Positions 12,740-55,477 of a stretch of DNA of 64,000 nucleotides are shown here, in pieces. Each line of letters begins with the position of its first letter. The first letter of the stretch is position 1. The position numbers and the translations under genes were made by a program. The notes below the pieces were generated by a model that saw only the letters and a list, made by a program, of their open reading frames with translations, did not search any database and was not told where the DNA came from. The stretch spans positions 62,001-126,000 of the IMG/VR virus record IMGVR_UViG_3300042455_001086. The stretch is one strand, 5' to 3'.

Positions 12740-12776
12740 ATTTTAATTTTATTTATAAATATCATAAAGAGTTAAA

Positions 12777-12869
12777 AAAAATATTTATATTTGTAGAACA
12801 AATCAAATATCTATGAAGACAATATTTTTTATTTTCACACTTTTTATTGTTAGTTTTGTTAATTCACAA
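12777..12869 (+). repeat. 93-bp direct repeat (promoter + signal-peptide coding), copy 1; copy 2 at 14318-14410
   Basis: Two mismatches by manual alignment. Confidence 0.9.
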
Positions 12870-13439
12870 GATAGTATTATCCAGTATTACAATGAAATTG
12901 CTTATAGATCTGAATTTGTAACAAATGGAAAACCAACAATACGACCCCCTAAAAAATGGAAGACTGATGTAAAAATATTTGTTATGGGGACAAAAGATTC
13001 TGTAACATATAATGAGTTATTGAAAGTTGTTGATGAGTTAAATGAGTTAATCAATCCAATCGAAATAAAAATTGTCAATGAAAAGTCTCAAGCAAATTTG
13101 ATTGCGTTTTTTGGTCTATGCGGTGAATACGATAAAATTGAACCTCAAGTTGTTAGATTTAGTGGTTATAATTATGGTTTAGCTTGTATATTTTCAGATG
13201 AAAATAATGATTACTCGCATGGTTCATTTTATGTTGATGTTGTAAGATGCGATTGGTTGCCGCCAGAAGAGGCAGTTATGTTAAAAAAACATATCGTTAG
13301 AGAAGAATTGACACAGTCATTGGGGCTTATGAATGATTCAATGAAATACCCTAATAGTATTTTTTATGAAGGGTGGTCAATGACGACTGAATTTACAAAT
13401 ATGGATAAAGAAATTATAAAATTACATTATAATAAATAA
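12813..13439 (+). CDS. Secreted DUF2927-like protein (zincin-like fold)
   Basis: Signal peptide; REELTQSLGLMNDS..SIFY. Confidence 0.7.
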   Translation: MKTIFFIFTLFIVSFVNSQDSIIQYYNEIAYRSEFVTNGKPTIRPPKKWKTDVKIFVMGTKDSVTYNELLKVVDELNELINPIEIKIVNEKSQANLIAFFGLCGEYDKIEPQVVRFSGYNYGLACIFSDENNDYSHGSFYVDVVRCDWLPPEEAVMLKKHIVREELTQSLGLMNDSMKYPNSIFYEGWSMTTEFTNMDKEIIKLHYNK

Positions 13440-14282
13440 TTATTGTGCTTTACTAACACCTATCATCTTACCTAGTGTTATGTTTTGGAGGTAGCCAAAC
13501 AAATAGTCGACATAACCAATTGGTGTTCCACCAGTACCCAATGAGTTATAAAATACGGCACCATCATAATTTCTTATTTTTAACATATTAAAATTTTTAC
13601 CAAATTTTGTCCAATTCGGTTGTAATGTTAAAACTGCTTTGTCACCATCGACAGCTAAATCAGTACCAGATTTTACATTTAAATCCGCTATAATTGCTTG
13701 TTTTACATATTCGGTAGTTATACCATTAGCTCGTTCTGTTTTTTTGGTAATAAAAGGTTTATTAATATCACCAGAATAATTAGTTGTGATTGGACTATCA
13801 AATAGATATATATATTGTTTCTGTTTATCACCAAGTACTTCCTCACCAATATAAAGAGCTTTCGGTACGAATGACATTGATATTAAATTATCTAAATTAT
13901 TATCCTTTATTGGAATTGAAGATCCTTTATATTCCATTGATTGGGCATCAAGAATACCCACCTTCTTTGTAAAAACCAACACATTTTTATATATAATATT
14001 ATCAATTGAACCACCATAGTATTTTTGCATCGTATATGCAATATTTGAAGGTCCAGGAATATAATACGCTCCAGTTTGTTCATATTTTTGAAGTTTAATC
14101 CCAGTTGGTTCAATTGATCTAACTGCTTGTCCGGTTAATTCACCCATAGCTGTTTGTTTCTTCACATAAAGAGGATTTTCTGTTGATGTTCCTTGTTCCA
14201 TTAAATTTTGTTCTGAAATGGCGTTTTTATGTAATCCCAATATTCTTGATTTTTCTTCTTCTGATATGATAATTTTTTTCAT
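13440..14282 (-). CDS. Leader-bearing hypothetical protein
   Basis: MKKIIISEEEKSRILGLH; start moved to 14282. Confidence 0.75.
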   Translation of the reverse strand: MKKIIISEEEKSRILGLHKNAISEQNLMEQGTSTENPLYVKKQTAMGELTGQAVRSIEPTGIKLQKYEQTGAYYIPGPSNIAYTMQKYYGGSIDNIIYKNVLVFTKKVGILDAQSMEYKGSSIPIKDNNLDNLISMSFVPKALYIGEEVLGDKQKQYIYLFDSPITTNYSGDINKPFITKKTERANGITTEYVKQAIIADLNVKSGTDLAVDGDKAVLTLQPNWTKFGKNFNMLKIRNYDGAVFYNSLGTGGTPIGYVDYLFGYLQNITLGKMIGVSKAQ

Positions 14283-14317
14283 AATATTTTTTACAATAAA
14301 TATTAAAACAATCAAAT

Positions 14318-14410
14318 AAAAATATTTATATTTGTAGAACAAATCAAATATCTATGAAAACAATATTTTTTATTTTCACACTTTTTATTCTTAGTTTTGT
14401 TAATTCACAA
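14318..14410 (+). repeat. 93-bp direct repeat, copy 2
   Basis: Matches 12777-12869. Confidence 0.9.
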
Positions 14411-14773
14411 ATTATCAAAATTAAAGTTTATGAAACTATTGAATACTCTAATTACGACACTTTGGGAGTTTTTAATGTGATCTCCAATGTTTTGGAACCT
14501 GTATTATACAACTATGGTAATTGTGAATATGTTATTGATTTGACAAACAAAACGGATATGTTTTTTCGAGATGGTGTTTTGGAAAGTGAGAGTGATATAA
14601 TTTATGTAAATAATGGAAGTTTATATGTTGTTAATTTTTTATATGAAGGTTATGATGTTGGTGTAATTTTTAATACTGATACTAGAAATGAATCTTTTAA
14701 TTGGTTTTCAAGAACCGGAGATCATTATGATATATCAAAAGCCACAAAATTTGAAATAATTAAAACACAATAA
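14354..14773 (+). CDS. Secreted hypothetical protein
   Basis: Signal peptide nearly identical to that of 12813. Confidence 0.7.
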   Translation: MKTIFFIFTLFILSFVNSQIIKIKVYETIEYSNYDTLGVFNVISNVLEPVLYNYGNCEYVIDLTNKTDMFFRDGVLESESDIIYVNNGSLYVVNFLYEGYDVGVIFNTDTRNESFNWFSRTGDHYDISKATKFEIIKTQ

Positions 14774-14777
14774 AATT

Positions 14778-14807
14778 AAAAACCCACCGATTAAAGTGGG
14801 TTTTTTT
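14778..14807. terminator. Bidirectional terminator between convergent genes
   Basis: A5-cccac/gtggg-T7. Confidence 0.8.
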
Positions 14808-14808
14808 A

Positions 14809-15303
14809 TTAAGGTTTTTTAACTGGTTGAGATTGTGCAGCGCCAGGTTTTTGAGGTTGTGGTTGGAAACCTGCAACCCAACCGTCAACGGCAGCTTTAA
14901 GACCTGGTTGTGGTAATTGTTGTAATGTTTTCGGTAGATTTTTATTAAAGTTAATATTAAACGCTTGAATGATGGAATTTCCAATTAGTCTTGGTCCACC
15001 CTGAGTTAGCATAATAGAAATGTCTTGAACCTCACCAACTTGTGTGTTTCCATACATAAATTTATATAATACTCTATCACCACTAGCAACTCTTTGCACA
15101 GTTAATTTAGCTTGTGGGAACTGTGGATTTTGTTTTATTTTTAAATCAATTTCTTTATTTAAAATTCCGGCAACTTGATTCATAATCTGAGATACAGTAC
15201 CTTCAGTATCAATTGCTTCAGTTAAAAATTGTTTTGAGATTACACTTTTGTGCATTCCAAGAATTCTTGATCTTTCTTCTTCTGTTATTATTAATTTTCC
15301 CAT
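14809..15303 (-). CDS. Leader-bearing hypothetical protein
   Basis: MGKLIITEEERSRILGMH. Confidence 0.75.
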   Translation of the reverse strand: MGKLIITEEERSRILGMHKSVISKQFLTEAIDTEGTVSQIMNQVAGILNKEIDLKIKQNPQFPQAKLTVQRVASGDRVLYKFMYGNTQVGEVQDISIMLTQGGPRLIGNSIIQAFNINFNKNLPKTLQQLPQPGLKAAVDGWVAGFQPQPQKPGAAQSQPVKKP

Positions 15304-15382: not shown

Positions 15383-15817
15383 TTAATTAATAGTGTAAAG
15401 TTCATAATATACATACAAAGCTCCACTCCAGTTATCAACTTCAGCATCAGCTGGGTTTGCGTTATATAAATCAAATCTCACACCAGAGCTAATTCCAGTT
15501 GAAATTAAATAAGGAATTGCATTATCACTAGGATTTTGACTATAATATACAGAGTATTGAACATATATATTATCTCTATTTTCAACGGTAAGATCCAAAT
15601 CCGGGTTATTGATCACAAAATAGATTGAACTACCAAATCCTGGAGATGGTGCGAAATCTTCCATCCCAAGAATGTCAATAATACCTTTTGTTGTATTTAC
15701 TGTGACAACATCGGTTTGATCACGGTCTAATTCATAATGTGCGACACTATTGTCGTTTAATTCAGTTCCATTAAGAACAATTTCAGATGCGATTAATTTA
15801 TCTACTTTTAGTGGCAT
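15383..15817 (-). CDS. Putative structural/fibre-associated beta protein (MPLKVDKLIASEIVLNGTEL N-terminus)
   Basis: Beta-rich composition; N-terminus shared with 15843. Confidence 0.5.
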   Translation of the reverse strand: MPLKVDKLIASEIVLNGTELNDNSVAHYELDRDQTDVVTVNTTKGIIDILGMEDFAPSPGFGSSIYFVINNPDLDLTVENRDNIYVQYSVYYSQNPSDNAIPYLISTGISSGVRFDLYNANPADAEVDNWSGALYVYYELYTIN

Positions 15818-15845
15818 AATTTTTTGTTTTTTAATTGTTTATTTA
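15757..15845 (-). repeat. ~89-bp direct repeat, also at 16340-16428
   Basis: Identical 20-codon N-terminus plus upstream DNA, one mismatch. Confidence 0.9.
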
Positions 15846-16400
15846 GTTATATACTCTTATTTCTAATCTTATATTAATATGTTGATTACTTCCATTACTT
15901 GCATATAAACTAATTTCTGATGTACCATTATTAGCACAAACAAAACCCACAAAAATAGTTTCATCATCTGAACCAGAATAAGCTGTTGCCCATATTTTAT
16001 TTTGTGTAAATAATTCAACACTATTTGCTAAATACACTCCTTGTGCTATATAAGTAAACCAAATATTACCAATAGTATTCTCTAACACTGTTACTTCTGG
16101 GGCTCCTGTGTTATATAGTAAGGTACTACCACCATAACTTAATGGTGTGTCGTTATTTATTGCAACAAAATAAGTATCTGGATTATTATTTGGTGCGCCA
16201 ACATTTGAAAAGTCACCACCAGCAGCTTGAATTTTATAAGTTACTCCTTTTGTTAATGGTCCCGAATTAATTCCGGTTGTATTACCTTGACCACTCTGTG
16301 TCAATAAAGCTGTATATACTTTATAAGGTAATACTCCAGTTAATTCAGTTCCATTAAGAACAATTTCAGATGCGATTAATTTATCTACTTTTAGTGGCAT
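15843..16400 (-). CDS. Putative structural/fibre-associated protein
   Basis: YKVYTALLTQSG...APEVTVLENTIG; G/N/T-rich. Confidence 0.5.
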   Translation of the reverse strand: MPLKVDKLIASEIVLNGTELTGVLPYKVYTALLTQSGQGNTTGINSGPLTKGVTYKIQAAGGDFSNVGAPNNNPDTYFVAINNDTPLSYGGSTLLYNTGAPEVTVLENTIGNIWFTYIAQGVYLANSVELFTQNKIWATAYSGSDDETIFVGFVCANNGTSEISLYASNGSNQHINIRLEIRVYN

Positions 16401-16918: not shown

Positions 16919-17293
16919 TTAGATTTGTTTTTTTCTTTCCCAGTTAAGATACAACCGGTCTTTATACCTTTTTTCAAGAAATGGTTTTAATTCCCAATAC
17001 ATATCCATCACCTTATTTCGGCTGGTCTCATCCCAAAGATGTTCATCATAGTCCTCATCATAATATGTATCAATTTCATCACCCTTTCTTTCGGATATAA
17101 ATTCATGCAAAAGATCACCAATAATATAATCAGAAAAATCTTTAAATTCATTTACGGGGGGTGTTGTAATAATAAAACGATTTACATTCTTGTCAAACCA
17201 TTCCAAATCTTCCATTGTTATTCTTCTTTTAAGAAACTGGGGAAGATTCAAAAATAATGTTTCATATTGCGATTCTGTGATTATTATTTTCAT
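16919..17293 (-). CDS. Leader + RR-family domain
   Basis: MKIIITESQY; FLKRRI. Confidence 0.75.
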   Translation of the reverse strand: MKIIITESQYETLFLNLPQFLKRRITMEDLEWFDKNVNRFIITTPPVNEFKDFSDYIIGDLLHEFISERKGDEIDTYYDEDYDEHLWDETSRNKVMDMYWELKPFLEKRYKDRLYLNWERKKQI

Positions 17294-17311
17294 ATAAATA
17301 AATATAACAAA

Positions 17312-17623
17312 TTAACAATCACTATCATTCCACAGTGAAATAAAATCATTGTAAAATTCATCATACATTAAATCGGTTATAATATCCCGTCCGTGGTCTT
17401 CGGTTTCATCGGAGAATACCTCATTATCCCTTTCATATCCTTCATCCCCATAAAAGAAACTAATACCTTGGTCAATACAAAACTCGGCATAATCCTCACC
17501 ATCCTCAAAATTACAAGGATCTTGAATTTCGGTTTGATAAGTAATTATATCCTTAACTTCCTGGATTCTTCTTAATCTTTTAAGAAGTTCTTTGTTTTGA
17601 GTTTCAGTAATTATTATTTTCAT
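17312..17623 (-). CDS. Leader + RR-family domain
   Basis: MKIIITETQ; LRRI. Confidence 0.75.
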   Translation of the reverse strand: MKIIITETQNKELLKRLRRIQEVKDIITYQTEIQDPCNFEDGEDYAEFCIDQGISFFYGDEGYERDNEVFSDETEDHGRDIITDLMYDEFYNDFISLWNDSDC

Positions 17624-21915: not shown

Positions 21916-22371
21916 TTAATCTCTATATATTCCCAATACTGGGATTTTAGTTAATCCTTTTCTAGTATAGGAGTGGAATCTGTGCCAACCATCTATAATT
22001 AGTTCTTCATCATCAAAATCAATTATGATTGGTAATACTGAATCTCCGTGGTCTGTTTGTTCATCTCCATACCATTTATGATAATTCTCAAAACTATCCC
22101 ATTCTAATCGTTCTGTAACCTCATCTTTTATTAACTTAATTGGGACAACTCCATAGTAAAACATTTTTCTTTTAAAAGAAGTTTGTAACTCGTCATCAAT
22201 TAAATCTTTAATCTCCATATCATTTGTAGTTCCTTCATTTCTAAATATCATTAATGATTTTTGATATGGATATGGTAATTTATAAAATGGTGATACATCT
22301 AAATAATGACTAATATCTTTTGATTCCAGTTCTTCCCTTAATATTCTTCTTATGGATTCTTGTAGGTTCAT
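21916..22371 (-). CDS. MNLQE leader + ParB/Srx-like domain
   Basis: LPIIID....IIDGWHRF. Confidence 0.7.
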   Translation of the reverse strand: MNLQESIRRILREELESKDISHYLDVSPFYKLPYPYQKSLMIFRNEGTTNDMEIKDLIDDELQTSFKRKMFYYGVVPIKLIKDEVTERLEWDSFENYHKWYGDEQTDHGDSVLPIIIDFDDEELIIDGWHRFHSYTRKGLTKIPVLGIYRD

Positions 22372-22691
22372 AATCTTTCTTTGTAGTGGTTGTATAATGA
22401 TTTAATTTTGTCATCAAACAAATCTGATACATCTGTTACAAAATCTATTTCTTCTTGTTGTGGTAGATCTTCCCAGCCCAATTCATACTCATTATACATA
22501 ATTGTTTCCACAGCTCTTAAAGTTAATTCATATTTGAATTGTCCGTAATTTTCCGTTTCATAATACACTTGTTCGGCATTACCTGGAAGTTTTCTTTTAA
22601 TATCGTCTAATTTAATTCTCCTGCGAAAGAATTTCGTTTCATTTAGTAATTCTTCCCTTAATATTCTTCTTATGTTTTCTTGTAGATTCAT
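22368..22691 (-). CDS. MNLQE leader + RR-family domain
   Basis: MNLQENIRRILREE; FFRRRI. Confidence 0.75.
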   Translation of the reverse strand: MNLQENIRRILREELLNETKFFRRRIKLDDIKRKLPGNAEQVYYETENYGQFKYELTLRAVETIMYNEYELGWEDLPQQEEIDFVTDVSDLFDDKIKSLYNHYKERL

Positions 22692-22694
22692 TTA

Positions 22695-22764
22695 TAATAA
22701 ATATATTGTAATCTTTTTATCTAATCTATAATCTTTAGTAATTCTCTTACTTCTGGGTGTGATA
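22695..22764 (-). repeat. 70-bp exact direct repeat, also at 23408-23477
   Basis: 3' end of gene 23434 plus TATTTAT element, duplicated. Confidence 0.9.
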
Positions 22765-22789
22765 TAATAATTTTCCATATGTTGGAATT

Positions 22790-23404
22790 TTAATCTAACA
22801 TTTGTGGTTTGTCAATTTCATCCATAGGTATTGTTGCCAAATATTCGTCTTCGAATCCTCTGGAAAGTTTTATCCCAATATTGTTATATGTTGGTTCATA
22901 ATTAGATTCTTCGTCTCTTAATTTTTGATTTAATTGATGTCTTAAAGTATCGGAACTTTTTTCACCAACAATCCCATCAATCTGATAGTTTGTTCTTAAT
23001 TTTGAATTAAACTCATCTATAATTTCCTGAATCTTTCTTTTAATTTTTGAGATTTCACTCTTCGTTACCGGCTCATCATTATATAATCTTATTATGTTAC
23101 CACCAATTCCATTAAAAATACCCCTTTCTTTTATGAACCTAGATAATGCCCCATTTAAGTTAATTTCACTAATTGGTGTAAATCTGTATTTAACCCCCAA
23201 TTCTTTTAGTCTACCGAAGTTTTCATACTCAATGTATGCGTATAGTGGTATAGTAATATATCGTAAGTCTGGTGATGAAAAATGACCATATTGTTTTATA
23301 ATTTTGGCGGCTTCAGATTTTCTAACATTAAGATTTTTATGGAAGTCCTCACCATTGGATAATTCTTCCCTTAATATTCTTCTTATGGATTCTTGTAGGT
23401 TCAT
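22790..23404 (-). CDS. MNLQE leader + unknown cargo
   Basis: MNLQESIRRILREE. Confidence 0.75.
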   Translation of the reverse strand: MNLQESIRRILREELSNGEDFHKNLNVRKSEAAKIIKQYGHFSSPDLRYITIPLYAYIEYENFGRLKELGVKYRFTPISEINLNGALSRFIKERGIFNGIGGNIIRLYNDEPVTKSEISKIKRKIQEIIDEFNSKLRTNYQIDGIVGEKSSDTLRHQLNQKLRDEESNYEPTYNNIGIKLSRGFEDEYLATIPMDEIDKPQMLD

Positions 23405-23433
23405 ATGTAATAAATATATTGTAATCTTTTTAT

Positions 23434-23943
23434 CTAATCTATAATCTTTAGTAATTCTCTTACTTCTGGGTGTGATAAGAATTTTTCTATATCATTTTTA
23501 ATTGTTCCGGTATTACAAAATTGATTGTTAAAGAAATGTTTTGGTATTTTATCATATTCATCGTGCCAAATATCTATTCTATAATCTTCTGGTAATTCAT
23601 TTAATTGTCTATCATACCAATCCTGGGCTCTTTCTTCTATTTCATCTTCTGTTGTGAATCCATTGGAGTCTAAATATAAATCGTCTATCTTTATGTAAGC
23701 GTGAATAAGATACGATTGTTCTACTTCTCCCTCGTCAAAATCATAAACCTCATCGGCCATTATTAAATAATATCTAATGTTTTTATTTGGGTATAGTTTT
23801 TTTAATCTACCAATAATATTATAAGCAAAATAATGACAATAACCGTGTTGGTAATCATATTTATTTCCGTGTTTATTTCCGGTGTTCCATTTTGATTCCA
23901 GTTCTTCCCTTAATATTCTTCTTATGGATTCTTGTAGGTTCAT
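23434..23943 (-). CDS. MNLQE leader + putative papain/transglutaminase-like domain
   Basis: GYCHYFA...IHAY...YLDSNG (C-H-D); start moved to 23943. Confidence 0.55.
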   Translation of the reverse strand: MNLQESIRRILREELESKWNTGNKHGNKYDYQHGYCHYFAYNIIGRLKKLYPNKNIRYYLIMADEVYDFDEGEVEQSYLIHAYIKIDDLYLDSNGFTTEDEIEERAQDWYDRQLNELPEDYRIDIWHDEYDKIPKHFFNNQFCNTGTIKNDIEKFLSHPEVRELLKIID

Positions 23944-23979
23944 ATGTAATAAATACCTTATATATACAAAAAACCCCAC
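23902..23979 (-). repeat. 78-bp terminator+promoter+leader unit, also at 26087-26164
   Basis: Three mismatches by manual alignment. Confidence 0.9.
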
Positions 23980-24002
23980 CTTTTGGGGTGGGAATTATCT
24001 GT

Positions 24003-24422
24003 TTAAATCGGTATAATCTCACATGGTTCTAATCTTATTTTCTTAACTTCACGATAGTTTGTGAGTGATTTTAATATATTAACCAAACTATCTGAAAGTT
24101 CTTTAAGGAATTTTTGATCTACAATATCATCTAATGTAATATAATCTATCTTATTTGTAAGTTCATAACCTCTATATTCTAACCATCTTTGTTTAACCCA
24201 GGTTTCATCTACATATATTTTACCATAGAATGAGATAATATCACTAATTTCAGAATATAAAACATCATATATTTCAATTTTTTTCCACCAGTCATATTTT
24301 TTAGTCATAGTTTTATTTAAAACCATTTCCATAGCCGAATAAGATAAACCGCTTTCTTCTTCCCTATTTATTTTGGCATACCACTCAGTTAATACTTTTC
24401 TTATGTTTTCTTGTAGGTTCAT
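24003..24422 (-). CDS. MNLQE leader + unknown cargo
   Basis: MNLQENIRKVLTE; start moved to 24422. Confidence 0.75.
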   Translation of the reverse strand: MNLQENIRKVLTEWYAKINREEESGLSYSAMEMVLNKTMTKKYDWWKKIEIYDVLYSEISDIISFYGKIYVDETWVKQRWLEYRGYELTNKIDYITLDDIVDQKFLKELSDSLVNILKSLTNYREVKKIRLEPCEIIPI

Positions 24423-24444
24423 ATTATTATAAATATGACCATAA

Positions 24445-24768
24445 TTAAATTCGGATATATCCAATTTTTGTTTTATATAATCTATATGTGTCTTTCATTT
24501 TGTCTTTATATCTATTTCTTATAAAATCACATAATTTTGAATGGATTATCTCCATTTCATCTATTTTATTAAAAAAAACATCCCAACTAGGCATTTTTAA
24601 ATGTTCTACCATAAAATAATTTGACATATCGTGTAATAATGCTTCTTTCCAACTACGATAATCATGTGATCTAACTAAATGTTGAGCACCATTAGAATTT
24701 AACCAGAAGTGGAAAACCTCATCAATAGTCTCAAGTCTTCTAATTATGAGTTTTTGGTATTTGTCCAT
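24445..24768 (-). CDS. RR-family protein lacking the N-terminal leader peptide
   Basis: LIIRRL; TACATTTG promoter 3 nt before ATG. Confidence 0.65.
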   Translation of the reverse strand: MDKYQKLIIRRLETIDEVFHFWLNSNGAQHLVRSHDYRSWKEALLHDMSNYFMVEHLKMPSWDVFFNKIDEMEIIHSKLCDFIRNRYKDKMKDTYRLYKTKIGYIRI

Positions 24769-24796
24769 AGACAAATGTAGTAATTAATTTTGAAAC

Positions 24797-25188
24797 CTAC
24801 CACTGTCTGTCTTTATCTGACATTGTATTGATAATATTATCTACTATTACATTAACTTTTGGGATAAATTTACGTAGATGCCATTGTAGTTCATAAACTA
24901 ATGGGTCTTCATCCACAAACCAATTGGAACTATATTCTATCTTGAGATATATGTTTAGAACATTTTTTTTTCAATATTTGTGATTCTAATTTTTGGTTCT
25001 AACTCAAGAAAATCGCAAACATCAAATGAAATGTGTTCATCATCTTCCGAATTCAGTTCTCTACAAGTTTTTAACATTAACTCTAATGTATCATCCAAAA
25101 GTTTCTGGAGTCTTTCTATTCTTCGACCGTGACCAGTTTTATTGATCTCTTCTTTTAATATTCTTTTTATGTTTTCTTGTAGGTTCAT
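24797..25188 (-). pseudogene. MNLQE-leader gene split at an A9 tract (needs +1 nt or -1 frameshift)
   Basis: Frame 0 stops at 24955; -1 frame continues NVLNIYLKIEY...DRQW* to 24797. Confidence 0.65.
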
Positions 25189-25189
25189 A

Positions 25190-26128
25190 TTAATCTCCAC
25201 ATTGTATATGATAATGTTCTCTTAACTTATCACCAAATTTATTTTTGACATATCTTTCTATAAATCTATACATTTGTCCCCATTCGTCTGAATCATCATC
25301 TAATTTGTCGGCAAAATAATCCCAATACATTCCATCTCCTGTCTTTTCGATTACAATCTCCACAAAGTTTTCAGGGGTCCTAACATTACATATACCATTA
25401 TATTGTCTTTCTATTTCTCTTACAGAAAAATCAACCAACCAATCAACCGTGTCTATTCTTCTTTTAATTAAATTAACCGGATTTGATATTTCTTCCTTTA
25501 ATATCCTTCTTATTGATTCTTGTAGGTTCATTAAGTCACCTATATCCATATTTTTTATATCATCCGGTAATTCATTAAACTCTTTATCCTGTTTAGCTTT
25601 TAACTCCTCAGCTTCTTTCTCTTTTTTTATTCGTTCTTTTTCTTCAGGTGTCAAATCAATTTTTGGTTGTTTTCCCGTTTTTAGATAAATCTCTTTAGCT
25701 TTGTCCGCTTCTTCGTTTGATCCAATTAATTTAATTGCTGAAGGTGGTATTGGTTCAGTTGTTACATAAAAATACCATTCTGGCTCTGTTTTCTCGTGAA
25801 TAGGATCTTTATACCAATTATTATCAAGTTTTGTTAAATCTATTTCCCAAATGTCATTCCCATAAACACCAAAAAAGTTACCATGTTTTGGGTCTTGTGC
25901 AAATATTAAAGGAACCGGTTCCAGATTTAATTCATTGTTTGTAATAAAATTCTTTGTTCTTTCCCCAATTTTTGGTAATAAACCTCTTTTTAGAATACTA
26001 TCTCGATTCTTAGATGATGAATAATGATGTAATATAGATGGTGGATCTATTTTTGTTAAAATACTTTTAAGGGAAATTTTTTCTATTTCTTCCCTTAATA
26101 TTCTTCTTATGGATTCTTGTAGGTTCAT
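25190..26128 (-). CDS. Fusion of two cassettes: leader + Tpt1/ART-like domain, then second leader + RR-family domain
   Basis: LHHYSSSKNRDSILKRGLLP...TEPIPPSAIKL; internal MNLQESIRRILKEE at 25531. Confidence 0.65.
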   Translation of the reverse strand: MNLQESIRRILREEIEKISLKSILTKIDPPSILHHYSSSKNRDSILKRGLLPKIGERTKNFITNNELNLEPVPLIFAQDPKHGNFFGVYGNDIWEIDLTKLDNNWYKDPIHEKTEPEWYFYVTTEPIPPSAIKLIGSNEEADKAKEIYLKTGKQPKIDLTPEEKERIKKEKEAEELKAKQDKEFNELPDDIKNMDIGDLMNLQESIRRILKEEISNPVNLIKRRIDTVDWLVDFSVREIERQYNGICNVRTPENFVEIVIEKTGDGMYWDYFADKLDDDSDEWGQMYRFIERYVKNKFGDKLREHYHIQCGD

Positions 26129-27488: not shown

Positions 27489-27875
27489 TTAAAAATTTGG
27501 AATTTGATTATCCCTTTCTTTATCCCTTAAATAAACTTCTAAGGTTGATGTTCCACCAGAATAAATTCTATCAAATGAACTCTTAAAAAAAGCTTCTAGT
27601 TGTGGTTTAAATTTTTTTCTAATCTCGAACATCTGGTCTGTTTGTTCGTCGTTAAAAGGTTTTTTCATAACTGTTGTAATAACTAAAACTCTTTCATCCG
27701 AATTTAAAAATTTTACATTTCTTATATCAACCATAAAATCATAAAAGTTTTCTGGAAACTCAATATCTTTGGTTAAAAAATTAATCATCTTTTTTACAGC
27801 ATACTTTAATCTTTCCGATTCAGTATTTTCAATTTCTTCTTTTAATATTCTTTTTATATTTTGCCTTATATTCAT
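27489..27875 (-). CDS. Leader-bearing hypothetical protein
   Basis: MNIRQNIKRILKEE; start moved to 27875. Confidence 0.75.
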   Translation of the reverse strand: MNIRQNIKRILKEEIENTESERLKYAVKKMINFLTKDIEFPENFYDFMVDIRNVKFLNSDERVLVITTVMKKPFNDEQTDQMFEIRKKFKPQLEAFFKSSFDRIYSGGTSTLEVYLRDKERDNQIPNF

Positions 27876-27876
27876 A

Positions 27877-28521
27877 TTAATATTCAATATCTGTTAGTTC
27901 AAACCATAAATCTTCTATTTGGTCTTCATACATATATTCCAATAAATTCATTACGGAGTCATACATATCTGATTCTTCCATAAACCCATCAATCAATAAA
28001 CCGTGTATTCCATCCATCATATAATTTAAAAATCGTGTTTTAAAATCCGAATAAGTAACTCCTGGGTGACTATGCCCTTCACTATAATATTTATAATTTT
28101 CATAAAATTCATCTTCTAAATCTTCTTTTGATACTCTCCTAAAAAGAAAATTTGCAGCATCTTTTTTATCGTATTTTGCTTCACTAATAATTGGTTCATA
28201 TCCTTCGCACTTTAGATTATCATAATATTCCTGAATTGTGTTTGAGAAAATTTCTTCAAGACCTTTGTTAATTATATTAATTTCTTCTTCTTCGGTTGAT
28301 TCATCATCATTTAAAAAGTCATAATTTGCCATTATATTAAAAATAACATCAGACATATCATCTAAAATAACACGATAAAACATATTATATCCTTCTTCCA
28401 CACCATACTTTGTTTTATAGAAACAACCATTTTGGTCCAAAAAAACATTTTGTAAAGCGTATTTTAAATCCGATACTGATATTCGTCTTAAAATATATTG
28501 TATTTCTTTTGTCATATCCAT
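27877..28521 (-). CDS. Protein with two tandem RR-family domains
   Basis: YILRRI and FLFRRV modules joined at IISE. Confidence 0.7.
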   Translation of the reverse strand: MDMTKEIQYILRRISVSDLKYALQNVFLDQNGCFYKTKYGVEEGYNMFYRVILDDMSDVIFNIMANYDFLNDDESTEEEEINIINKGLEEIFSNTIQEYYDNLKCEGYEPIISEAKYDKKDAANFLFRRVSKEDLEDEFYENYKYYSEGHSHPGVTYSDFKTRFLNYMMDGIHGLLIDGFMEESDMYDSVMNLLEYMYEDQIEDLWFELTDIEY

Positions 28522-28525
28522 AGAA

Positions 28526-29473
28526 TTAACTTGGTAATTTTTTACCTTTTAAATATGTTTTTTCGTTCTCAACTTTTATTTTAATTTTTGGTTCATATCC
28601 TTTTGGAAGTTTGTTTTCAATCCCTTTGAATTCCCCCATTTCATTATCCATCCTTACAGTAACTTCTTTCTTTTCTAAATTCATCATAATTTGTCCGACA
28701 GTTGTCATATTATACATATTTTTAGTTCTATATGGATTTAAAAATGGATCTTCGTCATATTTTTCTTTTAATCTATCAATAATCTCAATATCTGTTTTCA
28801 CATCTTCTAAATGTTTCTTGGCTAATTCCATTCGTGAGACAGATGATTTTCTTTTTTCACCCTTTGTATAACCAGCACCTTTTTGATAAATTCCGTGATT
28901 AGTCCTTACAACAAGTTTTGAGTCTTCTTTTAATTTTTTTATAACTGGTGCGTGTTTTCTTGTCATTTCAACAACATAGATATTTTTATTATCAGAAACT
29001 ATGGTTTCACCTTTTAATCCAACATCGTTTTTATCTTCACCGGTATAACTAATAATTGATTTTATGACTTTTGGTAGAGTTTTATAACTAAGAGCTTTTC
29101 TTATTTTTCCACCATCAGCAGCAAACTTTTTCTTTGATGTTTTATCTTTTATTTTATCAACTTGTCTTCTTTCTTTTTTAACACCCTTTCCTTCTTTTTC
29201 GTCTTCAACAACCAATAAACTTGAATTTACAATACCAATACCAAATTCATTCATTCCTTCACTCCAGTCTGTATCAATATCTCTCCAATATACAACCTCA
29301 ACATCATCAATTAATTCGTGTATAATTTCAACATTAGCTTTATATCCTCTGTCTCTATTCTTTGCTAAAACAATACCATCGTCAATTCTTACTCCGGCAA
29401 TCGTACATTCAACTAATGTTTTTAGTTCTATATGTTCTCTTAATATATTTTTGATTGAATCTTTTAAGTTCAT
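28526..29473 (-). CDS. Leader + Cys-nucleophile Ntn-hydrolase
   Basis: CTIAG...LAKNRDR...WSEGMNEFGIGIVNSSL, typical of C45/C59/C69-type Ntn hydrolases. Confidence 0.75.
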   Translation of the reverse strand: MNLKDSIKNILREHIELKTLVECTIAGVRIDDGIVLAKNRDRGYKANVEIIHELIDDVEVVYWRDIDTDWSEGMNEFGIGIVNSSLLVVEDEKEGKGVKKERRQVDKIKDKTSKKKFAADGGKIRKALSYKTLPKVIKSIISYTGEDKNDVGLKGETIVSDNKNIYVVEMTRKHAPVIKKLKEDSKLVVRTNHGIYQKGAGYTKGEKRKSSVSRMELAKKHLEDVKTDIEIIDRLKEKYDEDPFLNPYRTKNMYNMTTVGQIMMNLEKKEVTVRMDNEMGEFKGIENKLPKGYEPKIKIKVENEKTYLKGKKLPS

Positions 29474-29496: not shown

Positions 29497-30645
29497 TTAT
29501 TTACCAAAAAGTTCAGCTTCTCGTTTTCTTCTAACTTCAAGACCTGGAAATTTTCCAAACATATGTGAGCTTTCTTTTTTTAATTGTTCTTGAGCCTTTT
29601 CCATTTGACCTCTTTTTACATATTGAATAAATTCACTCATTCTAAAATTTTTAATCCCCATATTGTATATCATTGAAATCATTGCGTTATACATATTTTG
29701 TGTTATATTTGGTGTTATTCCTTTTTTTTCCCAATCATTTAATATTTTATTTAACTGGTCTTTTGATTCTTCAACATCATCTCTTAAAAGAATTTCAGCT
29801 TGGTTTTTTGTGATTGTTGTTTTACCTGGAATAATTCTATGATATTTAGGTAAGAAATTATAATTTCCACCAACATCACCTCTATTTGGATTACTAAACA
29901 CAGCGTGTCCATAACCAATTGTTTTTGCACCATCACCGATGTCATAAGCGGTTAATATTGGTTCGCCTTTATTAACGACTGAACCTTCTTCATATTTTAG
30001 ATGATCAATTAATTTATCGTCATAATTACGAATTCGTTTTTTTGTTTCTTTTAAACCACCACCAATATTGATTGGTAGTTCTGTTTTTTCTGGTTCAACT
30101 TGTTTTGGTTCTGGTAATGATTGATAACCAATAACACCTATTAAAGAATATAAAGCATATTTTAAAATCTTTTTTCTTACATTATCGTCAAGATTTTTTA
30201 TCTTTTCTTTAAGTAATTCCAAATATTTTTTAGCTTCTTCTTTTGTTTTTACCCACAAAGTTGAAAGATCTATATTTTTTTTGACATCAGTAAAATCCCA
30301 CTCAAAATCTGGTTCCCTATCTTCATTTATAAGATTTATCGACTGAATAGCCAAATTGATGTATTCTGAACTTAATTTTAAATTTTCATTTAAGTCTCTT
30401 GTGTATTTTCTAAATCTATATGGTGAGTTTTTGACTGCTGACTTTGGAAATCTGGTTCCAATACCTTGTCTTCTGGCCATTTTAAGTGTTCTTGTATATT
30501 CTTCAAGTTCTTTTTTCTTTTTCCCATCACAATGTGCTCGTTGTGAAAAACCTTTTGGGTTATCACAGTCGATTGAATCCTTATATTCTTTGGACCATTT
30601 CTCTTCTAATTCTTCTTTTAATATTTTTCTAATTAATTGTTTCAC
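29497..30645 (-). CDS. Leader + modules + GH24 phage lysozyme
   Basis: LKYEEG..AYD.GDG..TIGYGH..YNAMISMIYNMG..GLEVRRKREAELF; GTG start. Confidence 0.85.
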   Translation of the reverse strand: MKQLIRKILKEELEEKWSKEYKDSIDCDNPKGFSQRAHCDGKKKKELEEYTRTLKMARRQGIGTRFPKSAVKNSPYRFRKYTRDLNENLKLSSEYINLAIQSINLINEDREPDFEWDFTDVKKNIDLSTLWVKTKEEAKKYLELLKEKIKNLDDNVRKKILKYALYSLIGVIGYQSLPEPKQVEPEKTELPINIGGGLKETKKRIRNYDDKLIDHLKYEEGSVVNKGEPILTAYDIGDGAKTIGYGHAVFSNPNRGDVGGNYNFLPKYHRIIPGKTTITKNQAEILLRDDVEESKDQLNKILNDWEKKGITPNITQNMYNAMISMIYNMGIKNFRMSEFIQYVKRGQMEKAQEQLKKESSHMFGKFPGLEVRRKREAELFGK

Positions 30646-32480: not shown

Positions 32481-33479
32481 TTAAGCGACACTACTAACTA
32501 AATCAAACTTATCCGAATCACTTACAGCTTTTGATCTATGAAACCCAACAGCACCACCGGCATTTATATCAGCAAAATAAGTTGCGGAATCTTTTTTGTC
32601 TTTAAACTTAGGAAATGAATCACCTGACTTTCCTTTTGTTAAAAACACCACAGCAATTTCAGATGCCACATTTGGGTCATTAACTAAATCTGGATTACCA
32701 ACTAAATCTTTACCAATTAAATTACCATATTTTTCATAATTTCCTCTACCGGTCAATTGGTTGAGACCTCTTCCTCTATATTTCCAACCATCATCACCAC
32801 CTTGATTTCCAGCGGTTTTAGCATATACAACATTAAAGAATTTTTCAGGATCTTTTTTTAAGTTGGTTAATTCACTATCCGAATATTTTGCAACTCTGGA
32901 ACCAAAAATACTTTTAATTCTTGAATTTGATGTTCCGGCATATGATAGTTCTGATTTTGGTTTAAAACCCGATTCTTTTGAGATTACAGATAATATGCCA
33001 ATTTTTGCTAAAGGGTCTTTTATTCCAAATTTATTCATATGGTTAATAATTAAACCGATATTTCTTTTTTGTTCTCCGTCAAAACCACCAACTAATTTAA
33101 TATCACTATTTTTGGGTATTTGACTATCTTCTTGATCCGAACTAATACTATTTTCAAATAAAAACTTTTCTGTCAATTTCTTAATTGTTTCTAAGTCAAA
33201 ATAACCAGATTCTTCTAAATTATTTTCGGATTGGAAGTCTTTAATGGTTGATTGTGTGTTTTCGTCTAAAATCCCGTTTAACTCTATTTGTTTTTGTGTC
33301 ACAATTCTTAAAACAATTTGCATTATTCTAATCTCTTTGTTTGCACTATTTTTTGTAATCTCTTTGTTTTTACTAACCAAATCTTGATAGACCTTTATGA
33401 ATTTTTCAAATAGTTTTTTTCTATCATCATTTTCGTTGATGAGTTTTTTAAACTGGCTTTCAGTAATTACAATTTTCAT
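32481..33479 (-). CDS. Leader + peptidoglycan-binding domain + GH19 muramidase
   Basis: IKDFQSENNLEESG; KES; DGWKYRGRGLNQLTGRGNY; DLVGNPDLV. Confidence 0.85.
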   Translation of the reverse strand: MKIVITESQFKKLINENDDRKKLFEKFIKVYQDLVSKNKEITKNSANKEIRIMQIVLRIVTQKQIELNGILDENTQSTIKDFQSENNLEESGYFDLETIKKLTEKFLFENSISSDQEDSQIPKNSDIKLVGGFDGEQKRNIGLIINHMNKFGIKDPLAKIGILSVISKESGFKPKSELSYAGTSNSRIKSIFGSRVAKYSDSELTNLKKDPEKFFNVVYAKTAGNQGGDDGWKYRGRGLNQLTGRGNYEKYGNLIGKDLVGNPDLVNDPNVASEIAVVFLTKGKSGDSFPKFKDKKDSATYFADINAGGAVGFHRSKAVSDSDKFDLVSSVA

Positions 33480-41134: not shown

Positions 41135-41491
41135 TTATTTAGTCAAAATAATTTTAATAAATTTTCTGACTGTTCTAATAATTTTTTGTCTTTCTGAATC
41201 TTCTACTTTTGGATTACCGGACCAATCTTCCGGAATTATTTCAACATCTTCAAGTAATTCAAAAATTCTTCTTGTCCAATATGATCGATTTTGATATGAT
41301 GTAAATCCATAACCAGGAAAACCTTCAAAAGTGTATTCTGTAGTAGTTAAAGGTTCAATGTCACCCCAATTCCCACCCATTTTTCTTTCAGTCACAGTAA
41401 CTCTTCTTAAAAGAAAATTTAAAATAGAAGAATCAAACTCCTCGTTTGAAGAATTTGATTCTCTATTATTTTCTCTTAGTCTATGTCTCAT
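41135..41491 (-). CDS. Hypothetical protein with FLLRR motif
   Basis: 118-aa ORF. Confidence 0.6.
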   Translation of the reverse strand: MRHRLRENNRESNSSNEEFDSSILNFLLRRVTVTERKMGGNWGDIEPLTTTEYTFEGFPGYGFTSYQNRSYWTRRIFELLEDVEIIPEDWSGNPKVEDSERQKIIRTVRKFIKIILTK

Positions 41492-42030
41492 TTAAGAAAT
41501 TTCAATTTGTAAAGTGTTGAGTTAATTAACTCTTGAACGGTGTCAATTTGATTTTGAATAAAACTATCATCTACTGAATCTCTATTTTCATCTATGATGT
41601 CAAGTAATCTTTCAAAATATGAAATTGTTTTTTTGTTATTTCTATATTGTTCAATCTTGAAAGTTTTGAAATTTTTAATAATCCCATATTTTCCTTGATA
41701 TGACTCTACAATACCATCAAATAATCCTACAACTCCATCGTAATAGTCGTTTAATGCCTTGTGTTCGGCAAATGATTTTGTTTGAAGGTGAAACACATGG
41801 GCTTGGTTTCTTGAATGTAAGATATTACATACCATCTCACAAAAATCTTCATTTGATTCTGAATCGTCTTCTACATTTTCACTATCGTCCTCTTCCTCTT
41901 CATCTTCTGCATCATCCTCATCGTCTTCAATGTCATCAACTTCCTCATCTTCTGTATCATCCTCATCTTCCTCAAATAGATTTCGTTTTTTGAGTTCTTC
42001 ATAAAGTTTTTCTGTTAAATCTTTTTCCAT
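41488..42030 (-). CDS. Ferritin/Dps-like protein (DUF5856-like) with acidic N-terminal arm
   Basis: HSRNQAHVFHLQTKSFAEHKALNDYYD..IVESYQGKYG..YKLKFLK. Confidence 0.8.
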   Translation of the reverse strand: MEKDLTEKLYEELKKRNLFEEDEDDTEDEEVDDIEDDEDDAEDEEEEDDSENVEDDSESNEDFCEMVCNILHSRNQAHVFHLQTKSFAEHKALNDYYDGVVGLFDGIVESYQGKYGIIKNFKTFKIEQYRNNKKTISYFERLLDIIDENRDSVDDSFIQNQIDTVQELINSTLYKLKFLK

Positions 42031-55085: not shown

Positions 55086-55094
55086 AACAATAGA

Positions 55095-55466: not shown

Positions 55467-55477
55467 AATAATAAATA

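What the first reader, a model, noticed from the sequence alone, without database searches (positions are those of the whole stretch)
28526..29473. Ntn-hydrolase whose catalytic Cys directly follows a leader ending in LVE: possible zymogen activated by capsid maturation
Seen: MNLKDSIKNILREHIELKTLVE|CTIAG...KNRD, with the Cys at codon 29407-29405. Established: Cys-type Ntn hydrolases (C45/C59/C69 families) need a free N-terminal Cys in the CT..KNxD motif. Inference: cleavage after the [ILV]xE motif would expose the nucleophile exactly. This is the strongest internal support for the leader-cleavage model and suggests an enzyme switched on only inside the matured virion. Autoprocessing, as in other Ntn precursors, is the alternative.
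Basis: partly seen in the sequence, partly recalled or inferred. Interest (0 to 1): 0.8.

Follow-up and report, generated by a model that had tools for sequence, protein, structure and literature searches.

The report
Phage Ntn-hydrolase precursor gated by cleavage motif
A jumbo-phage gene encodes an amide-cleaving enzyme whose catalytic cysteine directly follows a short leader ending in the cut-site motif of T4-type capsid-maturation proteases, so the enzyme is probably switched on during head maturation, though self-cleavage is not excluded.

Summary
Window 28526-29473 (-) encodes a 315-aa protein that starts MNLKDSIKNILREHIELKTLVE|CTIAG...AKNRD, with Cys23 at 29407-29405.

An alignment-based AlphaFold model (pLDDT 90) has an Ntn-hydrolase fold. 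The leader is a helix (residues 3-15) plus a low-confidence linker, and the first core strand starts exactly at Cys23. The nearest solved structures are C45 isopenicillin-N acyltransferase and CV2077.

- All 120 close homologues with an intact N-terminus, and all 79 IMG/VR loci, keep a hydrophobic residue-x-Glu directly before the Cys.
- In 162 such junctions P3 is I/L/V in 158, while P2 and P4-P10 vary freely.
- Orthologues 85% identical carry unrelated leaders.
- Leader-free MC forms arose at least three times.
- A separate clade has [KR]-x-[AGS]|C.

In six relatives the gene lies within 10 kb of T4-like portal, S77 prohead protease or gp23 capsid genes. In one it sits between protease and capsid gene, among proteins whose N-termini also end in [ILV]xE.

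Trans-activation by the prohead protease is the best reading (about 0.55). It is not shown:
- The S77 gene was not found in the window or in about 10 kb of the same contig beyond its 3' end.
- Known Ntn precursors self-process.
- Some relatives have 4-5-residue leaders.

I rate this a new variant of known kinds.

The parts
28526..29473 (-). Whole ORF, 315 aa: precursor of a C45-like Cys-Ntn amidohydrolase
29408..29473 (-). 22-residue N-terminal leader or propeptide, MNLKDSIKNILREHIELKTLVE. It is a type-A leader, shared with many other ORFs of the window.
   Evidence: modelled as helix 3-15 plus a low-confidence linker 16-22
29435..29443 (-). First [ILV]xE motif inside the leader (L11-R12-E13). 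This is a candidate upstream cleavage site and the core of the type-A leader (I-L-R-E).
   Evidence: the same ILxE core is present in the other type-A leaders
29408..29416 (-). Junction tripeptide L20-V21-E22 (P3-P2-P1), directly before the nucleophile
29405..29407 (-). Cys23 codon (TGT), the predicted N-terminal nucleophile. It is the first residue of the first core beta strand.
29351..29362 (-). K38-N39-R40-D41. This is the KNRD motif, equivalent to RNxD of choloylglycine hydrolases and NRDE of TANGO2. K38, R40 and D41 are invariant; N39 is at least 90% conserved.
28898..28900 (-). Asn192 (TNHG), invariant. It is a candidate oxyanion-hole residue by analogy with Asn175 of PVA/BSH (analogy from general knowledge).
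28832..28834 (-). Arg214, invariant. It is a candidate active-site arginine.
29497..30645 (-). Upstream neighbour, 23 nt away: 382-aa protein with a type-A leader (MKQLIRKILKEELEE) and a C-terminal phage lysozyme domain
27489..27887 (-). Downstream neighbour with a type-A leader (..MNIRQNIKRILKEE); function unknown
32481..33479 (-). 332-aa endolysin- or chitinase-like protein with a type-B leader (MKIVITESQFKKLINE)
41488..42030 (-). Acidic protein with DUF5856, a domain fused to the S77 prohead protease in Chryseobacterium phages MA9V-1 and MA9V-2

Best explanation
The gene encodes the inactive precursor of a cysteine N-terminal-nucleophile (Ntn) amidohydrolase of a jumbo phage. The window is bases 62001-126000 of a 257-kb IMG/VR contig with 29% GC.

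Residues 1-22 form a detachable leader: an amphipathic helix of a type carried by about a quarter of the ORFs in the window, followed by a flexible linker ending in Leu-Val-Glu.

Proposed mechanism:
1. The leader takes the precursor into the assembling prohead core, as the capsid targeting sequences of T4 internal proteins do.
2. When the T4-type (S77, gp21-like) prohead protease is activated, it cuts after Glu22, and probably also after Glu13. This removes the leader and leaves Cys23 as the free alpha-amino nucleophile.
3. The now-competent enzyme stays in the head and is ejected with the DNA. In the new host it hydrolyses an amide bond, possibly in the cell envelope, since the neighbouring leader-bearing genes encode lysozyme-like enzymes.

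Shown: the ORF, the fold, the position of Cys at the start of the core, the conservation of P3 and P1, the modular and swappable leader, and head-module linkage in relatives.

Inferred: targeting, the identity of the cutting protease, packaging and ejection, and the substrate.
For: Fold:
- The alignment-based AF2 model has pLDDT 90.3. Helix 3-15, linker 16-22 at pLDDT about 61, and strand 1 starting at residue 23.
- Foldseek top hits are 3gvz and IAT 2x1c/2x1d (E 1e-9), then BSH, PVA, NAAA and acid ceramidase.
- Pfam AAT scores 23.6 bits. NCBIfam C45_proenzyme scores 40 bits.
- K38, R40, D41, N192 and R214 are invariant. C23 and N39 are at least 90% conserved.

Junction:
- Glu at P1 in every close homologue with an intact N-terminus and in all 79 IMG/VR loci.
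- P3 is I/L/V in 158 of 162 E-type junctions. Entropy is 1.49 bits at P3 against 3.0-3.5 bits at P2 and P4-P10.
- The tripeptide is kept even in 4-7-residue leaders such as MINE|C, MKLSE|C and MAKLLNE|C.

Leader modularity:
- About 33 of 121 window ORFs carry one of four related leader types.
- P0005 and P0013 are 85% identical over the first 150 mature residues but have unrelated leaders, both ending IxE|C.
- [ILV]xE is enriched in the first 25 residues of window ORFs (55.6% against 37.5% of internal windows, p=2e-4). Control motifs with D, K, Q, N or S in place of E are not enriched.

Head linkage:
- In L084 (a 266-kb contig) the gene order is portal (PF07230) ... S77 protease (PF03420, 94.5 bits) ... 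Ntn ... gp23 MCP (PF07068).
- L053, L059, L064, L065 and L071 also have head genes within 10 kb.
- In L084 the protease, the MCP, a putative scaffold protein and two small paralogues all begin with 7-12-residue leaders ending [ILV]xE followed by G, A, S or T. The MCP has LDE|A just before its conserved body.
- Cultured Chryseobacterium phage MA9V-1 has the homologue (..EFLNE|CVIAAK) plus a T4-like portal, S77 protease and gp23.

Literature:
- T4, phiKZ and SPN3US prohead proteases all cut after Glu (PMC5694885).
- In the T4 IPIII CTS, residues 8 and 10 (P3 and P1) determine processing, and Asp at P1 blocks it. Propeptides are 7-65 residues long (PMC9026906).

The leader is dispensable for the enzyme:
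- MC forms arose at least three times.
- One has a stop codon directly before ATG-TGT, in a contig of giant-virus type.
Against: - No S77 protease, portal or MCP gene was detected in the 64-kb window or in about 10 kb of the same contig beyond its 3' end. Two further steps past the 5' end landed on a 48.7-kb relative's contig and showed no structural genes.
- Every characterised Ntn precursor with a propeptide activates itself (PMC9140057). Short propeptides before a Cys nucleophile, such as MLG|C in penicillin V acylase, are typical of autoprocessing (general knowledge).
- Leaders of 4-5 residues in relatives cannot be targeting helices.
- Leaderless forms occur in phage-like contigs, so capsid gating is not essential to the family.
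- The sister clade with [KR]x[AGS]|C has no known matching head protease, and no head genes were seen near it.
- There are no proteomic data on any homologue. The MA9V-1 paper has no mass spectrometry.
Confidence: 0.55

Rival explanations
1. Autoprocessing only. The precursor folds and Cys23 attacks its own Glu22-Cys23 bond (N-to-S acyl shift), as in isopenicillin-N acyltransferase, penicillin V acylase, NAAA and acid ceramidase. On this view the conserved P3/P1 residues fit the enzyme's own substrate pockets, so the propeptide mimics the substrate, for example a bond after a Glu residue. The prohead protease plays no part at this bond. The leader may still target the protein or merely delay activity.
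For: The nearest structures are all self-processing precursors. NCBIfam's nearest model is 'C45 family autoproteolytic'. A review states that autoproteolysis is the hallmark of the superfamily (PMC9140057). Very short 4-5-residue leaders occur in relatives. The domain also lies inside large polyvalent proteins, where self-cleavage would be a simple way to free it. No S77 gene was found in the window or in the flanks examined.
Against: The self-processing families I know of show no P3 requirement paired with a free P2. P3/P1 here equal the T4 gp21 determinants (PMC9026906). The same tripeptide ends the N-terminal leaders of unrelated head-module proteins in L084. A sister clade uses a completely different pair, K/R at P3 with A/G/S at P1, on an enzyme core with the same invariant residues. 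That is hard to reconcile with a propeptide that mimics one substrate. The canonical C45 N-terminal pro-region of about 100 residues is absent.
Confidence: 0.3
2. The Ntn protein is itself the leader peptidase. After freeing its own Cys it cuts [ILV]xE sites in trans and removes the leaders of the roughly 30 leader-bearing proteins. In the polyvalent relatives it would separate the domains.
For: Its own junction has the same motif as the other leaders. The domain is embedded in polyvalent proteins that need processing. In the class-A polyproteins a leader-like motif RVA[AS]R recurs between domains.
Against: Cys-Ntn enzymes of the C45/C59/C89 type are not known as endopeptidases acting on other proteins (general knowledge). 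An S77 protease with the right specificity is present in the relatives. Leader-bearing proteins are far more widespread than this gene would need to be. Sites matching [KR]x[AGS] after the recurring motif in polyproteins were inconsistent.
Confidence: 0.05
3. The leader is not removed in the capsid at all. It serves another purpose, such as localisation in the infected cell, interaction with a partner, or translation or stability. Cys23 would be exposed by a host protease or never, leaving the protein as a non-catalytic structural or binding module.
For: Targeting into the prohead is inferred only. The four leader types occur on about a quarter of the ORFs in this window, which is many for head contents. 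The neighbourhood of the gene in this window is not a structural module.
Against: The catalytic constellation (C23, K38, N39, D41, N192, R214) is invariant or nearly so over deep divergence, which argues for an active enzyme that needs a free Cys. The junction tripeptide is under strong selection while the rest of the leader is not.
Confidence: 0.1

Closest known systems
T4 internal proteins IPI/IPII/IPIII and Alt: capsid targeting sequence cut by prohead protease gp21 (S77)
   Same: A short N-terminal propeptide (7-20 residues in T4) ends in hydrophobic-x-Glu, with P3 and P1 as the processing determinants. The cargo is enzymes or effectors packaged in the head and ejected into the host. Leaders are portable between unrelated cargos. 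Relatives of this gene sit in T4-like head modules with an S77 protease (PMC9026906, PMC9958956).
   Different: None of the T4 cargos covered in the papers read here is described as needing its new N-terminal residue as the catalytic nucleophile. Here the cut would create the active site, giving true zymogen activation. Leader sequences are unrelated to MKTYQEFIAE. Packaging is not shown. The protease gene was not located in this genome.
phiKZ / SPN3US ejection and inner-body proteins processed by gp175 / gp245
   Same: These are jumbo phages with dozens of head proteins whose propeptides are removed after Glu. There are often several redundant sites per propeptide (PMC5694885, PMC9026906), as with LRE13 and LVE22 here.
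   Different: Their motif has a small residue (S/A/G) at P3, not I/L/V. Their propeptides are often longer than 100 residues. No Ntn hydrolase is reported among their substrates in the papers read here.
Peptidase family C45 / acyl-CoA:isopenicillin-N acyltransferase (PF03417; NCBIfam C45_proenzyme)
   Same: This is the best structural match: Cys nucleophile at the start of the first core strand, with a marginal Pfam hit.
   Different: Canonical C45 proenzymes carry an N-terminal chain of about 100 residues and cut themselves at Gly|Cys. This protein has a 22-residue leader ending in Glu. It scores 40 bits against a cut-off of 85 on the NCBIfam model, and only its C-terminal half matches Pfam.
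Choloylglycine hydrolase / penicillin V acylase (C59) and the TANGO2/NRDE family
   Same: Cys-Ntn fold, a C...(R/K)NxD motif about 16-19 residues after the Cys, an MC start or a very short propeptide, and Foldseek or Atlas similarity.
   Different: No Pfam CBAH or TANGO2 hit at E<=0.1. TM-scores are lower than for IAT. Those families are cellular and are exposed by Met removal or self-cleavage.
Polyvalent proteins of phages and conjugative elements (Iyer, Burroughs, Anand, de Souza, Aravind 2017)
   Same: Distant homologues of this domain are embedded in proteins of 500-2800 residues together with RNA ligase, PolyA_pol, HAD_SAK, LigT, topoisomerase IB, SOD and Zeta-toxin-like kinase domains. 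Such proteins are thought to be delivered with the DNA.
   Different: The window's protein is a single domain. A term search of the 2017 paper found its list of four peptidase superfamilies and no mention of an Ntn hydrolase.

Membership tests
Ntn-hydrolase superfamily | Four-layer alpha-beta-beta-alpha fold | tested here: met
   AF2 model with pLDDT 90.3 and pTM 0.88. There are 29 PDB hits with E<=1e-3, all Ntn hydrolases.
Ntn-hydrolase superfamily | Nucleophile (Cys/Ser/Thr) is the first residue of the first core beta strand and becomes the N-terminus of the mature chain | tested here: inconclusive
   The position is met: strand 1 starts at Cys23, Cys is at least 90% conserved, and MC-starting homologues exist. 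Whether the mature chain really starts at Cys23 needs protein chemistry.
Peptidase C45 / AAT (PF03417, NF040521) | Score above the curated family cut-offs | tested here: inconclusive
   Pfam scores 23.6 against 23.2 bits and matches only residues 157-277. NCBIfam scores 40 against 85 bits, which is not met.
Peptidase C45 / AAT (PF03417, NF040521) | N-terminal pro-region or alpha chain of about 100 residues before the Cys | tested here: not met
   The leader is 22 residues. In the MC homologue P0163, residue 10 aligns to profile position 101 of 313.
Peptidase C45 / AAT (PF03417, NF040521) | Autoproteolytic activation | not testable with these tools
   Needs expression of wild-type and C23A precursor.
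Choloylglycine hydrolase family C59 (PF02275) | Profile match, plus the Cys / Arg / Asp / Asn / Arg constellation | tested here: not met
   No Pfam CBAH hit at E<=0.1. There is fold similarity only, with TM 0.4-0.5. Analogous residues K38, D41, N192 and R214 are invariant.
T4-type prohead-protease substrate with capsid targeting propeptide | N-terminal propeptide ending in [L/I]-x-Glu, with P3 and P1 conserved | tested here: met
   criterion taken from PMC9026906 and PMC5694885
T4-type prohead-protease substrate with capsid targeting propeptide | The same genome encodes an S77 (gp21-like) prohead protease | tested here: inconclusive
   Not found in the window or in about 10 kb of the same contig beyond its 3' end. 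Searches fetched a relative's contig past the 5' end. The protease is present next to the orthologue in L053, L059, L065, L071 and L084, and in MA9V-1.
T4-type prohead-protease substrate with capsid targeting propeptide | Protein present in the virion with the processed N-terminus | not testable with these tools
   No proteomics found for any homologue.
Polyvalent proteins | Two or more unrelated effector domains in one polypeptide | tested here: not met
   The window protein is a single domain. Only distant homologues are polyvalent.

The most novel reading that the evidence does not exclude
An Ntn hydrolase family has handed its obligatory activation cut over from autoproteolysis to the virus's own capsid-maturation protease. 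The enzyme would be made inert, loaded into the prohead by a swappable leader, and armed only when the head matures. The two residues that define the cut, P3 and P1, would be retuned or dropped as the gene moves between virus lineages: [ILV]xE in phages with T4-type heads, [KR]x[AGS] in a high-GC clade of huge phages and polyvalent proteins, and none in giant-virus-like contigs. This would be the first Ntn zymogen activated in trans, and a general way for jumbo phages to carry dangerous enzymes safely.
Probability: 0.4. Interest if true: 0.8.

Novelty: new variant of a known kind. Interest (0 to 1): 0.66.

Why it matters
The textbook hallmark of Ntn hydrolases is that they activate themselves. 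A member whose nucleophile is exposed by another enzyme, the capsid-maturation protease, would break that rule. It would also be a clear case of a packaged phage enzyme kept as a true zymogen until head maturation.

The family is large and unannotated. There are 710 hits at 90% clustering and 463 representatives at 50%. It spans jumbo phages, polyvalent 'Swiss-army-knife' proteins and giant-virus-like contigs.

The work also exposes a very rich system of interchangeable N-terminal leaders in an uncultured 257-kb phage, carried by about a quarter of the ORFs in the window. That system could serve as a natural toolkit for loading foreign proteins into capsids.

A cultured relative, Chryseobacterium phage MA9V-1, makes the hypothesis directly testable.

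Tried and rejected
1. A single-sequence AlphaFold run gave a useless model (pLDDT 33). I repeated it with an 81-sequence alignment.

2. A profile search of PDB sequences found nothing. Only fold comparison worked.

3. PHROGs has no family for the protein. A megablast of 6 kb against phage genomes found nothing.

4. Locating the head protease of the window's own contig failed by every route:
- phmmer and HMM searches of the window found none.
- Homologue searches with the MA9V-1 protease and portal reached only 4 and 23 proteins, none on the 257-kb contig.
- A scan with the MA9V-1 portal alone found no relative.
- A scan with the L053 capsid protein returned only its own abundant lineage.
- One walk of about 10 kb past the 3' end of the window on the same contig showed RNA-repair genes. 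Two walks past the 5' end landed on a 48.7-kb relative's contig and showed unknown genes and an IS605 element.
- None of the protease loci came from a close relative of the window phage.

5. I tried to test whether the [KR]x[AGS] clade uses a different head protease. No head genes lay within 10 kb in 8 such loci. The recurring RVA[AS]R motif in its polyproteins is not consistently followed by [KR]x[AGS]. This remains open.

6. Orthologues of the neighbouring leader-bearing genes are too few in the fetched loci to score their cleavage sites.

7. A literature search for the leader sequences found nothing. A search for Ntn hydrolase together with prohead protease also found nothing.

8. The sigma-70 promoter and terminator scan around the gene was at background level.

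9. The names given by sources to homologues ('ribosomal protein S25', 'TamB', 'dipeptidase') are unsupported by any profile, and I ignored them.
Full report
**What is there.**
Window 28526-29473 (minus strand) is a single ATG-started ORF of 315 codons. It begins MNLKDSIKNILREHIELKTLVE-CTIAGVRIDDGIVLAKNRDRGY. No alternative start codon lies between Met1 and Cys23. The gene sits in a tight same-strand run. A 382-aa protein with a phage lysozyme domain ends 23 nt upstream, and the next ORF starts 4 nt downstream. The window is bases 62001-126000 of a 257,166-bp contig with 29% GC, held as JGI Ga0453178_0000004 and IMGVR_UViG_3300042455_001086.

**It is an Ntn hydrolase.**
- Pfam gives a marginal AAT (C45) hit on the C-terminal half (23.6 bits against a cut-off of 23.2).
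- NCBIfam gives 'C45 family autoproteolytic acyltransferase/hydrolase' at 40 bits, far below its cut-off of 85.
- PHROGs and a profile search of PDB sequences give nothing.
- A single-sequence AlphaFold model failed. With an 81-sequence alignment the model is confident (pLDDT 90.3, pTM 0.88). It has helix 3-15, a low-confidence linker 16-22, and the first core strand starting exactly at residue 23.
- Foldseek against the PDB returns only Ntn hydrolases. CV2077 (3gvz) and isopenicillin-N acyltransferase come first (E about 1e-9), then bile-salt hydrolases, penicillin V acylase, NAAA and acid ceramidase.
- K38, R40, D41, N192 and R214 are invariant, and C23 and N39 are nearly so. This is the pattern expected of an active Cys-Ntn amidohydrolase.
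- The protein lacks the roughly 100-residue N-terminal chain of canonical C45 proenzymes. I therefore treat it as a distinct, unannotated family nearest to C45, not as a member of it.

- The word-indexed search found 710 homologues. The exhaustive search found 463 representatives at 50% identity.
- Every close homologue with an intact N-terminus (58-92% identity) has hydrophobic-x-Glu directly before the Cys. So do all 79 IMG/VR loci; one has Phe at P3.
- Over 240 junctions three classes appear:
  - 162 have Glu at P1. In these P3 is I87, L55, V16, M3, T1.
  - 60 have A/G/S at P1. In these P3 is always K or R.
  - 16 start directly with MC.
- In the Glu class the entropy is 1.49 bits at P3, against 3.0-3.5 bits at P2 and at P4-P10. 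Selection therefore acts on two side chains and not on the leader as a whole.
- A further IMG/VR set shows the tripeptide surviving in leaders of only 4-7 residues, such as MINE|C, MLNE|C, MKLSE|C and MNKLINE|C.

**The leader is a portable module.**
- About 33 of roughly 121 ORFs in the window begin with one of four related leader types: MNLQESIRRILREE, MKIIITESQY, KLTESDLTRIV and ITEEEKSRILGMHK.
- Orthologues of the Ntn protein carry different types. P0005 and P0013 are 85% identical in the mature part but have unrelated leaders, both ending IxE|C.
- The lysozyme neighbour likewise has a type-A leader here and a type-B leader in relatives.
- [ILV]xE is enriched in the first 25 residues of window ORFs (55.6% against 37.5% of internal windows, p = 2e-4). 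The same motif with D, K, Q, N or S in place of E is not enriched. Because the leaders are paralogous, these ORFs are not independent observations.

**Link to T4-type head assembly.**
- The only cultured phages with a homologue are Chryseobacterium jumbo phages MA9V-1 and MA9V-2 (40% identity..EFLNE|CVIAAK).
- MA9V-1 has a T4-like portal, a gp23-like capsid protein, and an S77-like prohead protease fused to DUF5856.
- In six uncultured relatives (L053, L059, L064, L065, L071, L084) the Ntn gene is within 10 kb of these head genes. Pfam confirms S77 at 94-109 bits, Portal_T4 and Gp23.
- In L084, a 266-kb contig, the order is portal ... S77 protease ... Ntn ... capsid protein. That is the region where T4 keeps its prohead core genes.
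- In that module the protease (MQPKLLIE|T), two small paralogues (MK[KT]QNSYLIME|G), a putative scaffold protein (MASSKLLKE|A), other ORFs and the capsid protein (..QLLDE|A just before its conserved body) all carry [ILV]xE-terminated N-terminal peptides. The Ntn protein (MAKLLNE|C) fits the series.
- The literature supplies the rule. T4, phiKZ and SPN3US prohead proteases all cut after Glu (PMC5694885). In the T4 IPIII capsid targeting sequence, residues 8 and 10 (P3 and P1) govern processing, and Asp at P1 blocks it. Propeptides span 7-65 residues and often hold redundant sites (PMC9026906).
- The window's leader has two such sites, LRE13 and LVE22.

**What the wider family says.**
- On a tree of the mature domains (FastTree, 133 sequences) the [KR]x[AGS] class is one clade (support 98) and the Glu class is paraphyletic. 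MC forms arise at least three times.
- One MC member lies in a 23.6%-GC contig with Erv1/Alr, an RFC subunit and dual-specificity phosphatases. That is giant-virus-like. A stop codon stands directly before its ATG-TGT.
- Another MC member is in a phage-like contig. More occur in 31%-GC contigs of up to 270 kb.
- The leader is therefore not needed for folding or catalysis.
- The [KR]x[AGS] clade is mostly from 54-62% GC contigs. It is often embedded in proteins of 500-2800 residues together with RNA ligase, PolyA polymerase-like, HAD_SAK, LigT, topoisomerase IB, SOD and Zeta-toxin-like domains. These are polyvalent proteins in the sense of Iyer et al. 2017. A term search of that paper found four peptidase superfamilies and no mention of an Ntn hydrolase.
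- These proteins have their own recurring motif, RVA[AS]R[HYW][LV], at N-termini and between domains.
- Whether that clade is cut by another protease or by itself could not be settled.

**Mechanism and rivals.**
- The best-supported reading (0.55) is that the leader brings the precursor into the prohead, and the S77-type protease cuts after Glu22 to create the free Cys23. Activation would then coincide with head maturation, and the enzyme would be delivered with the DNA.
- The main rival (0.30) is ordinary autoproteolysis, which is the rule for every characterised Ntn precursor (PMC9140057). It is favoured by the very short leaders of some relatives and by internal copies in polyproteins.
- The P3/P1 pattern, its identity with the gp21 determinants, its reuse on unrelated head proteins and the head-module context speak for the trans model. 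The missing protease gene in the part of this genome that could be read speaks against it. So do the leaderless phage forms.
- Two minor rivals are that the Ntn protein is itself the leader peptidase (0.05) and that the leader is never removed in the head (0.10).
- The substrate is unknown. Neighbouring leader-bearing lysozyme- and endolysin-like genes, and Atlas neighbours called 'conjugal transfer protein', hint at the cell envelope.

**Novelty and verdict.**
- No paper in the library links an Ntn hydrolase to a prohead protease. The leader sequences are not found in any text.
- The parts are known: CTS-type propeptides, S77 proteases and Ntn zymogens. The combination, a cut by the capsid protease that would create the catalytic N-terminus, is not.
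- I rate it a new variant of known kinds, with interest 0.66.
- The decisive experiments are simple and possible with a cultured relative.

Noticed in passing
window 1-64000 (e.g. 21916-26128, 16919-17623, 54717-55481, 11918-15303): About 33 of roughly 121 ORFs start with one of four related N-terminal leader types: A MNLQESIRRILREE, B MKIIITESQY, C KLTESDLTRIV, D ITEEEKSRILGMHK. All share an L-x-E-S/h-x-R-I-h core. I found no description of them in the literature library.
   Followed up: partly
P0240, P0229, P0253, P0152 (distant homologues): The [KR]x[AGS]|C clade has its own recurring motif RVA[AS]R[HYW][LV]. It occurs at N-termini and repeatedly between domains of polyvalent proteins of 900-2800 residues (RNA ligase, PolyA_pol, HAD_SAK, LigT, Topo IB, SOD). 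Its function is unknown.
   Followed up: partly
L168 226-1128: A leaderless MC homologue lies in a 23.6%-GC contig with Erv1/Alr sulfhydryl oxidase, an RFC subunit and two dual-specificity phosphatases. This gene set is typical of giant viruses of eukaryotes, so the family crosses the boundary between phages and giant viruses.
   Followed up: partly
window 41488-42030 (-): An acidic protein with DUF5856 (76 bits). The same domain is fused to the S77 prohead protease in Chryseobacterium phages MA9V-1/2, and small DUF5856 ORFs lie a few kb upstream of the Ntn gene in several relatives. It may be a prohead-core protein.
   Followed up: partly
window 15383-15817 and 15843-16400 (-): Two adjacent paralogues share the N-terminus MPLKVDKLIASEIVLNGTEL and then diverge. 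No Pfam hit for the larger one.
   Followed up: no
window 12813-13439 and 14354-14773 (+): Two plus-strand ORFs, set among minus-strand genes, share a signal-peptide-like start MKTIFFIFTLFI(V/L)SFVNSQ. They may be secreted proteins or lipoproteins.
   Followed up: no
L249 (same contig, bases 115013-135252): Just beyond the 3' end of the window the phage encodes separate RNA ligase, AAA, HAD_SAK_2 and phosphatase genes. These are the same RNA-repair domains that are fused to the Ntn domain in the polyvalent relatives.
   Followed up: no
L330 16686-18383 (48.7-kb contig of a close relative): An IS200/IS605 pair (Y1 transposase plus OrfB/TnpB) is inserted in a relative's genome, at a place where it departs from the window's contig.
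   Followed up: no
window 29497-30645 and 32481-33479 (-): Two cell-wall hydrolase-like proteins (a phage lysozyme domain, and an endolysin/chitinase-like protein matching phrog_181) carry type-A and type-B leaders. This suggests they are also processed or packaged rather than being ordinary endolysins.
   Followed up: partly
homologue list: Source annotations of close homologues ('ribosomal protein S25', 'autotransporter translocation and assembly factor TamB', 'dipeptidase') are not supported by any profile and look like annotation noise.
   Followed up: no
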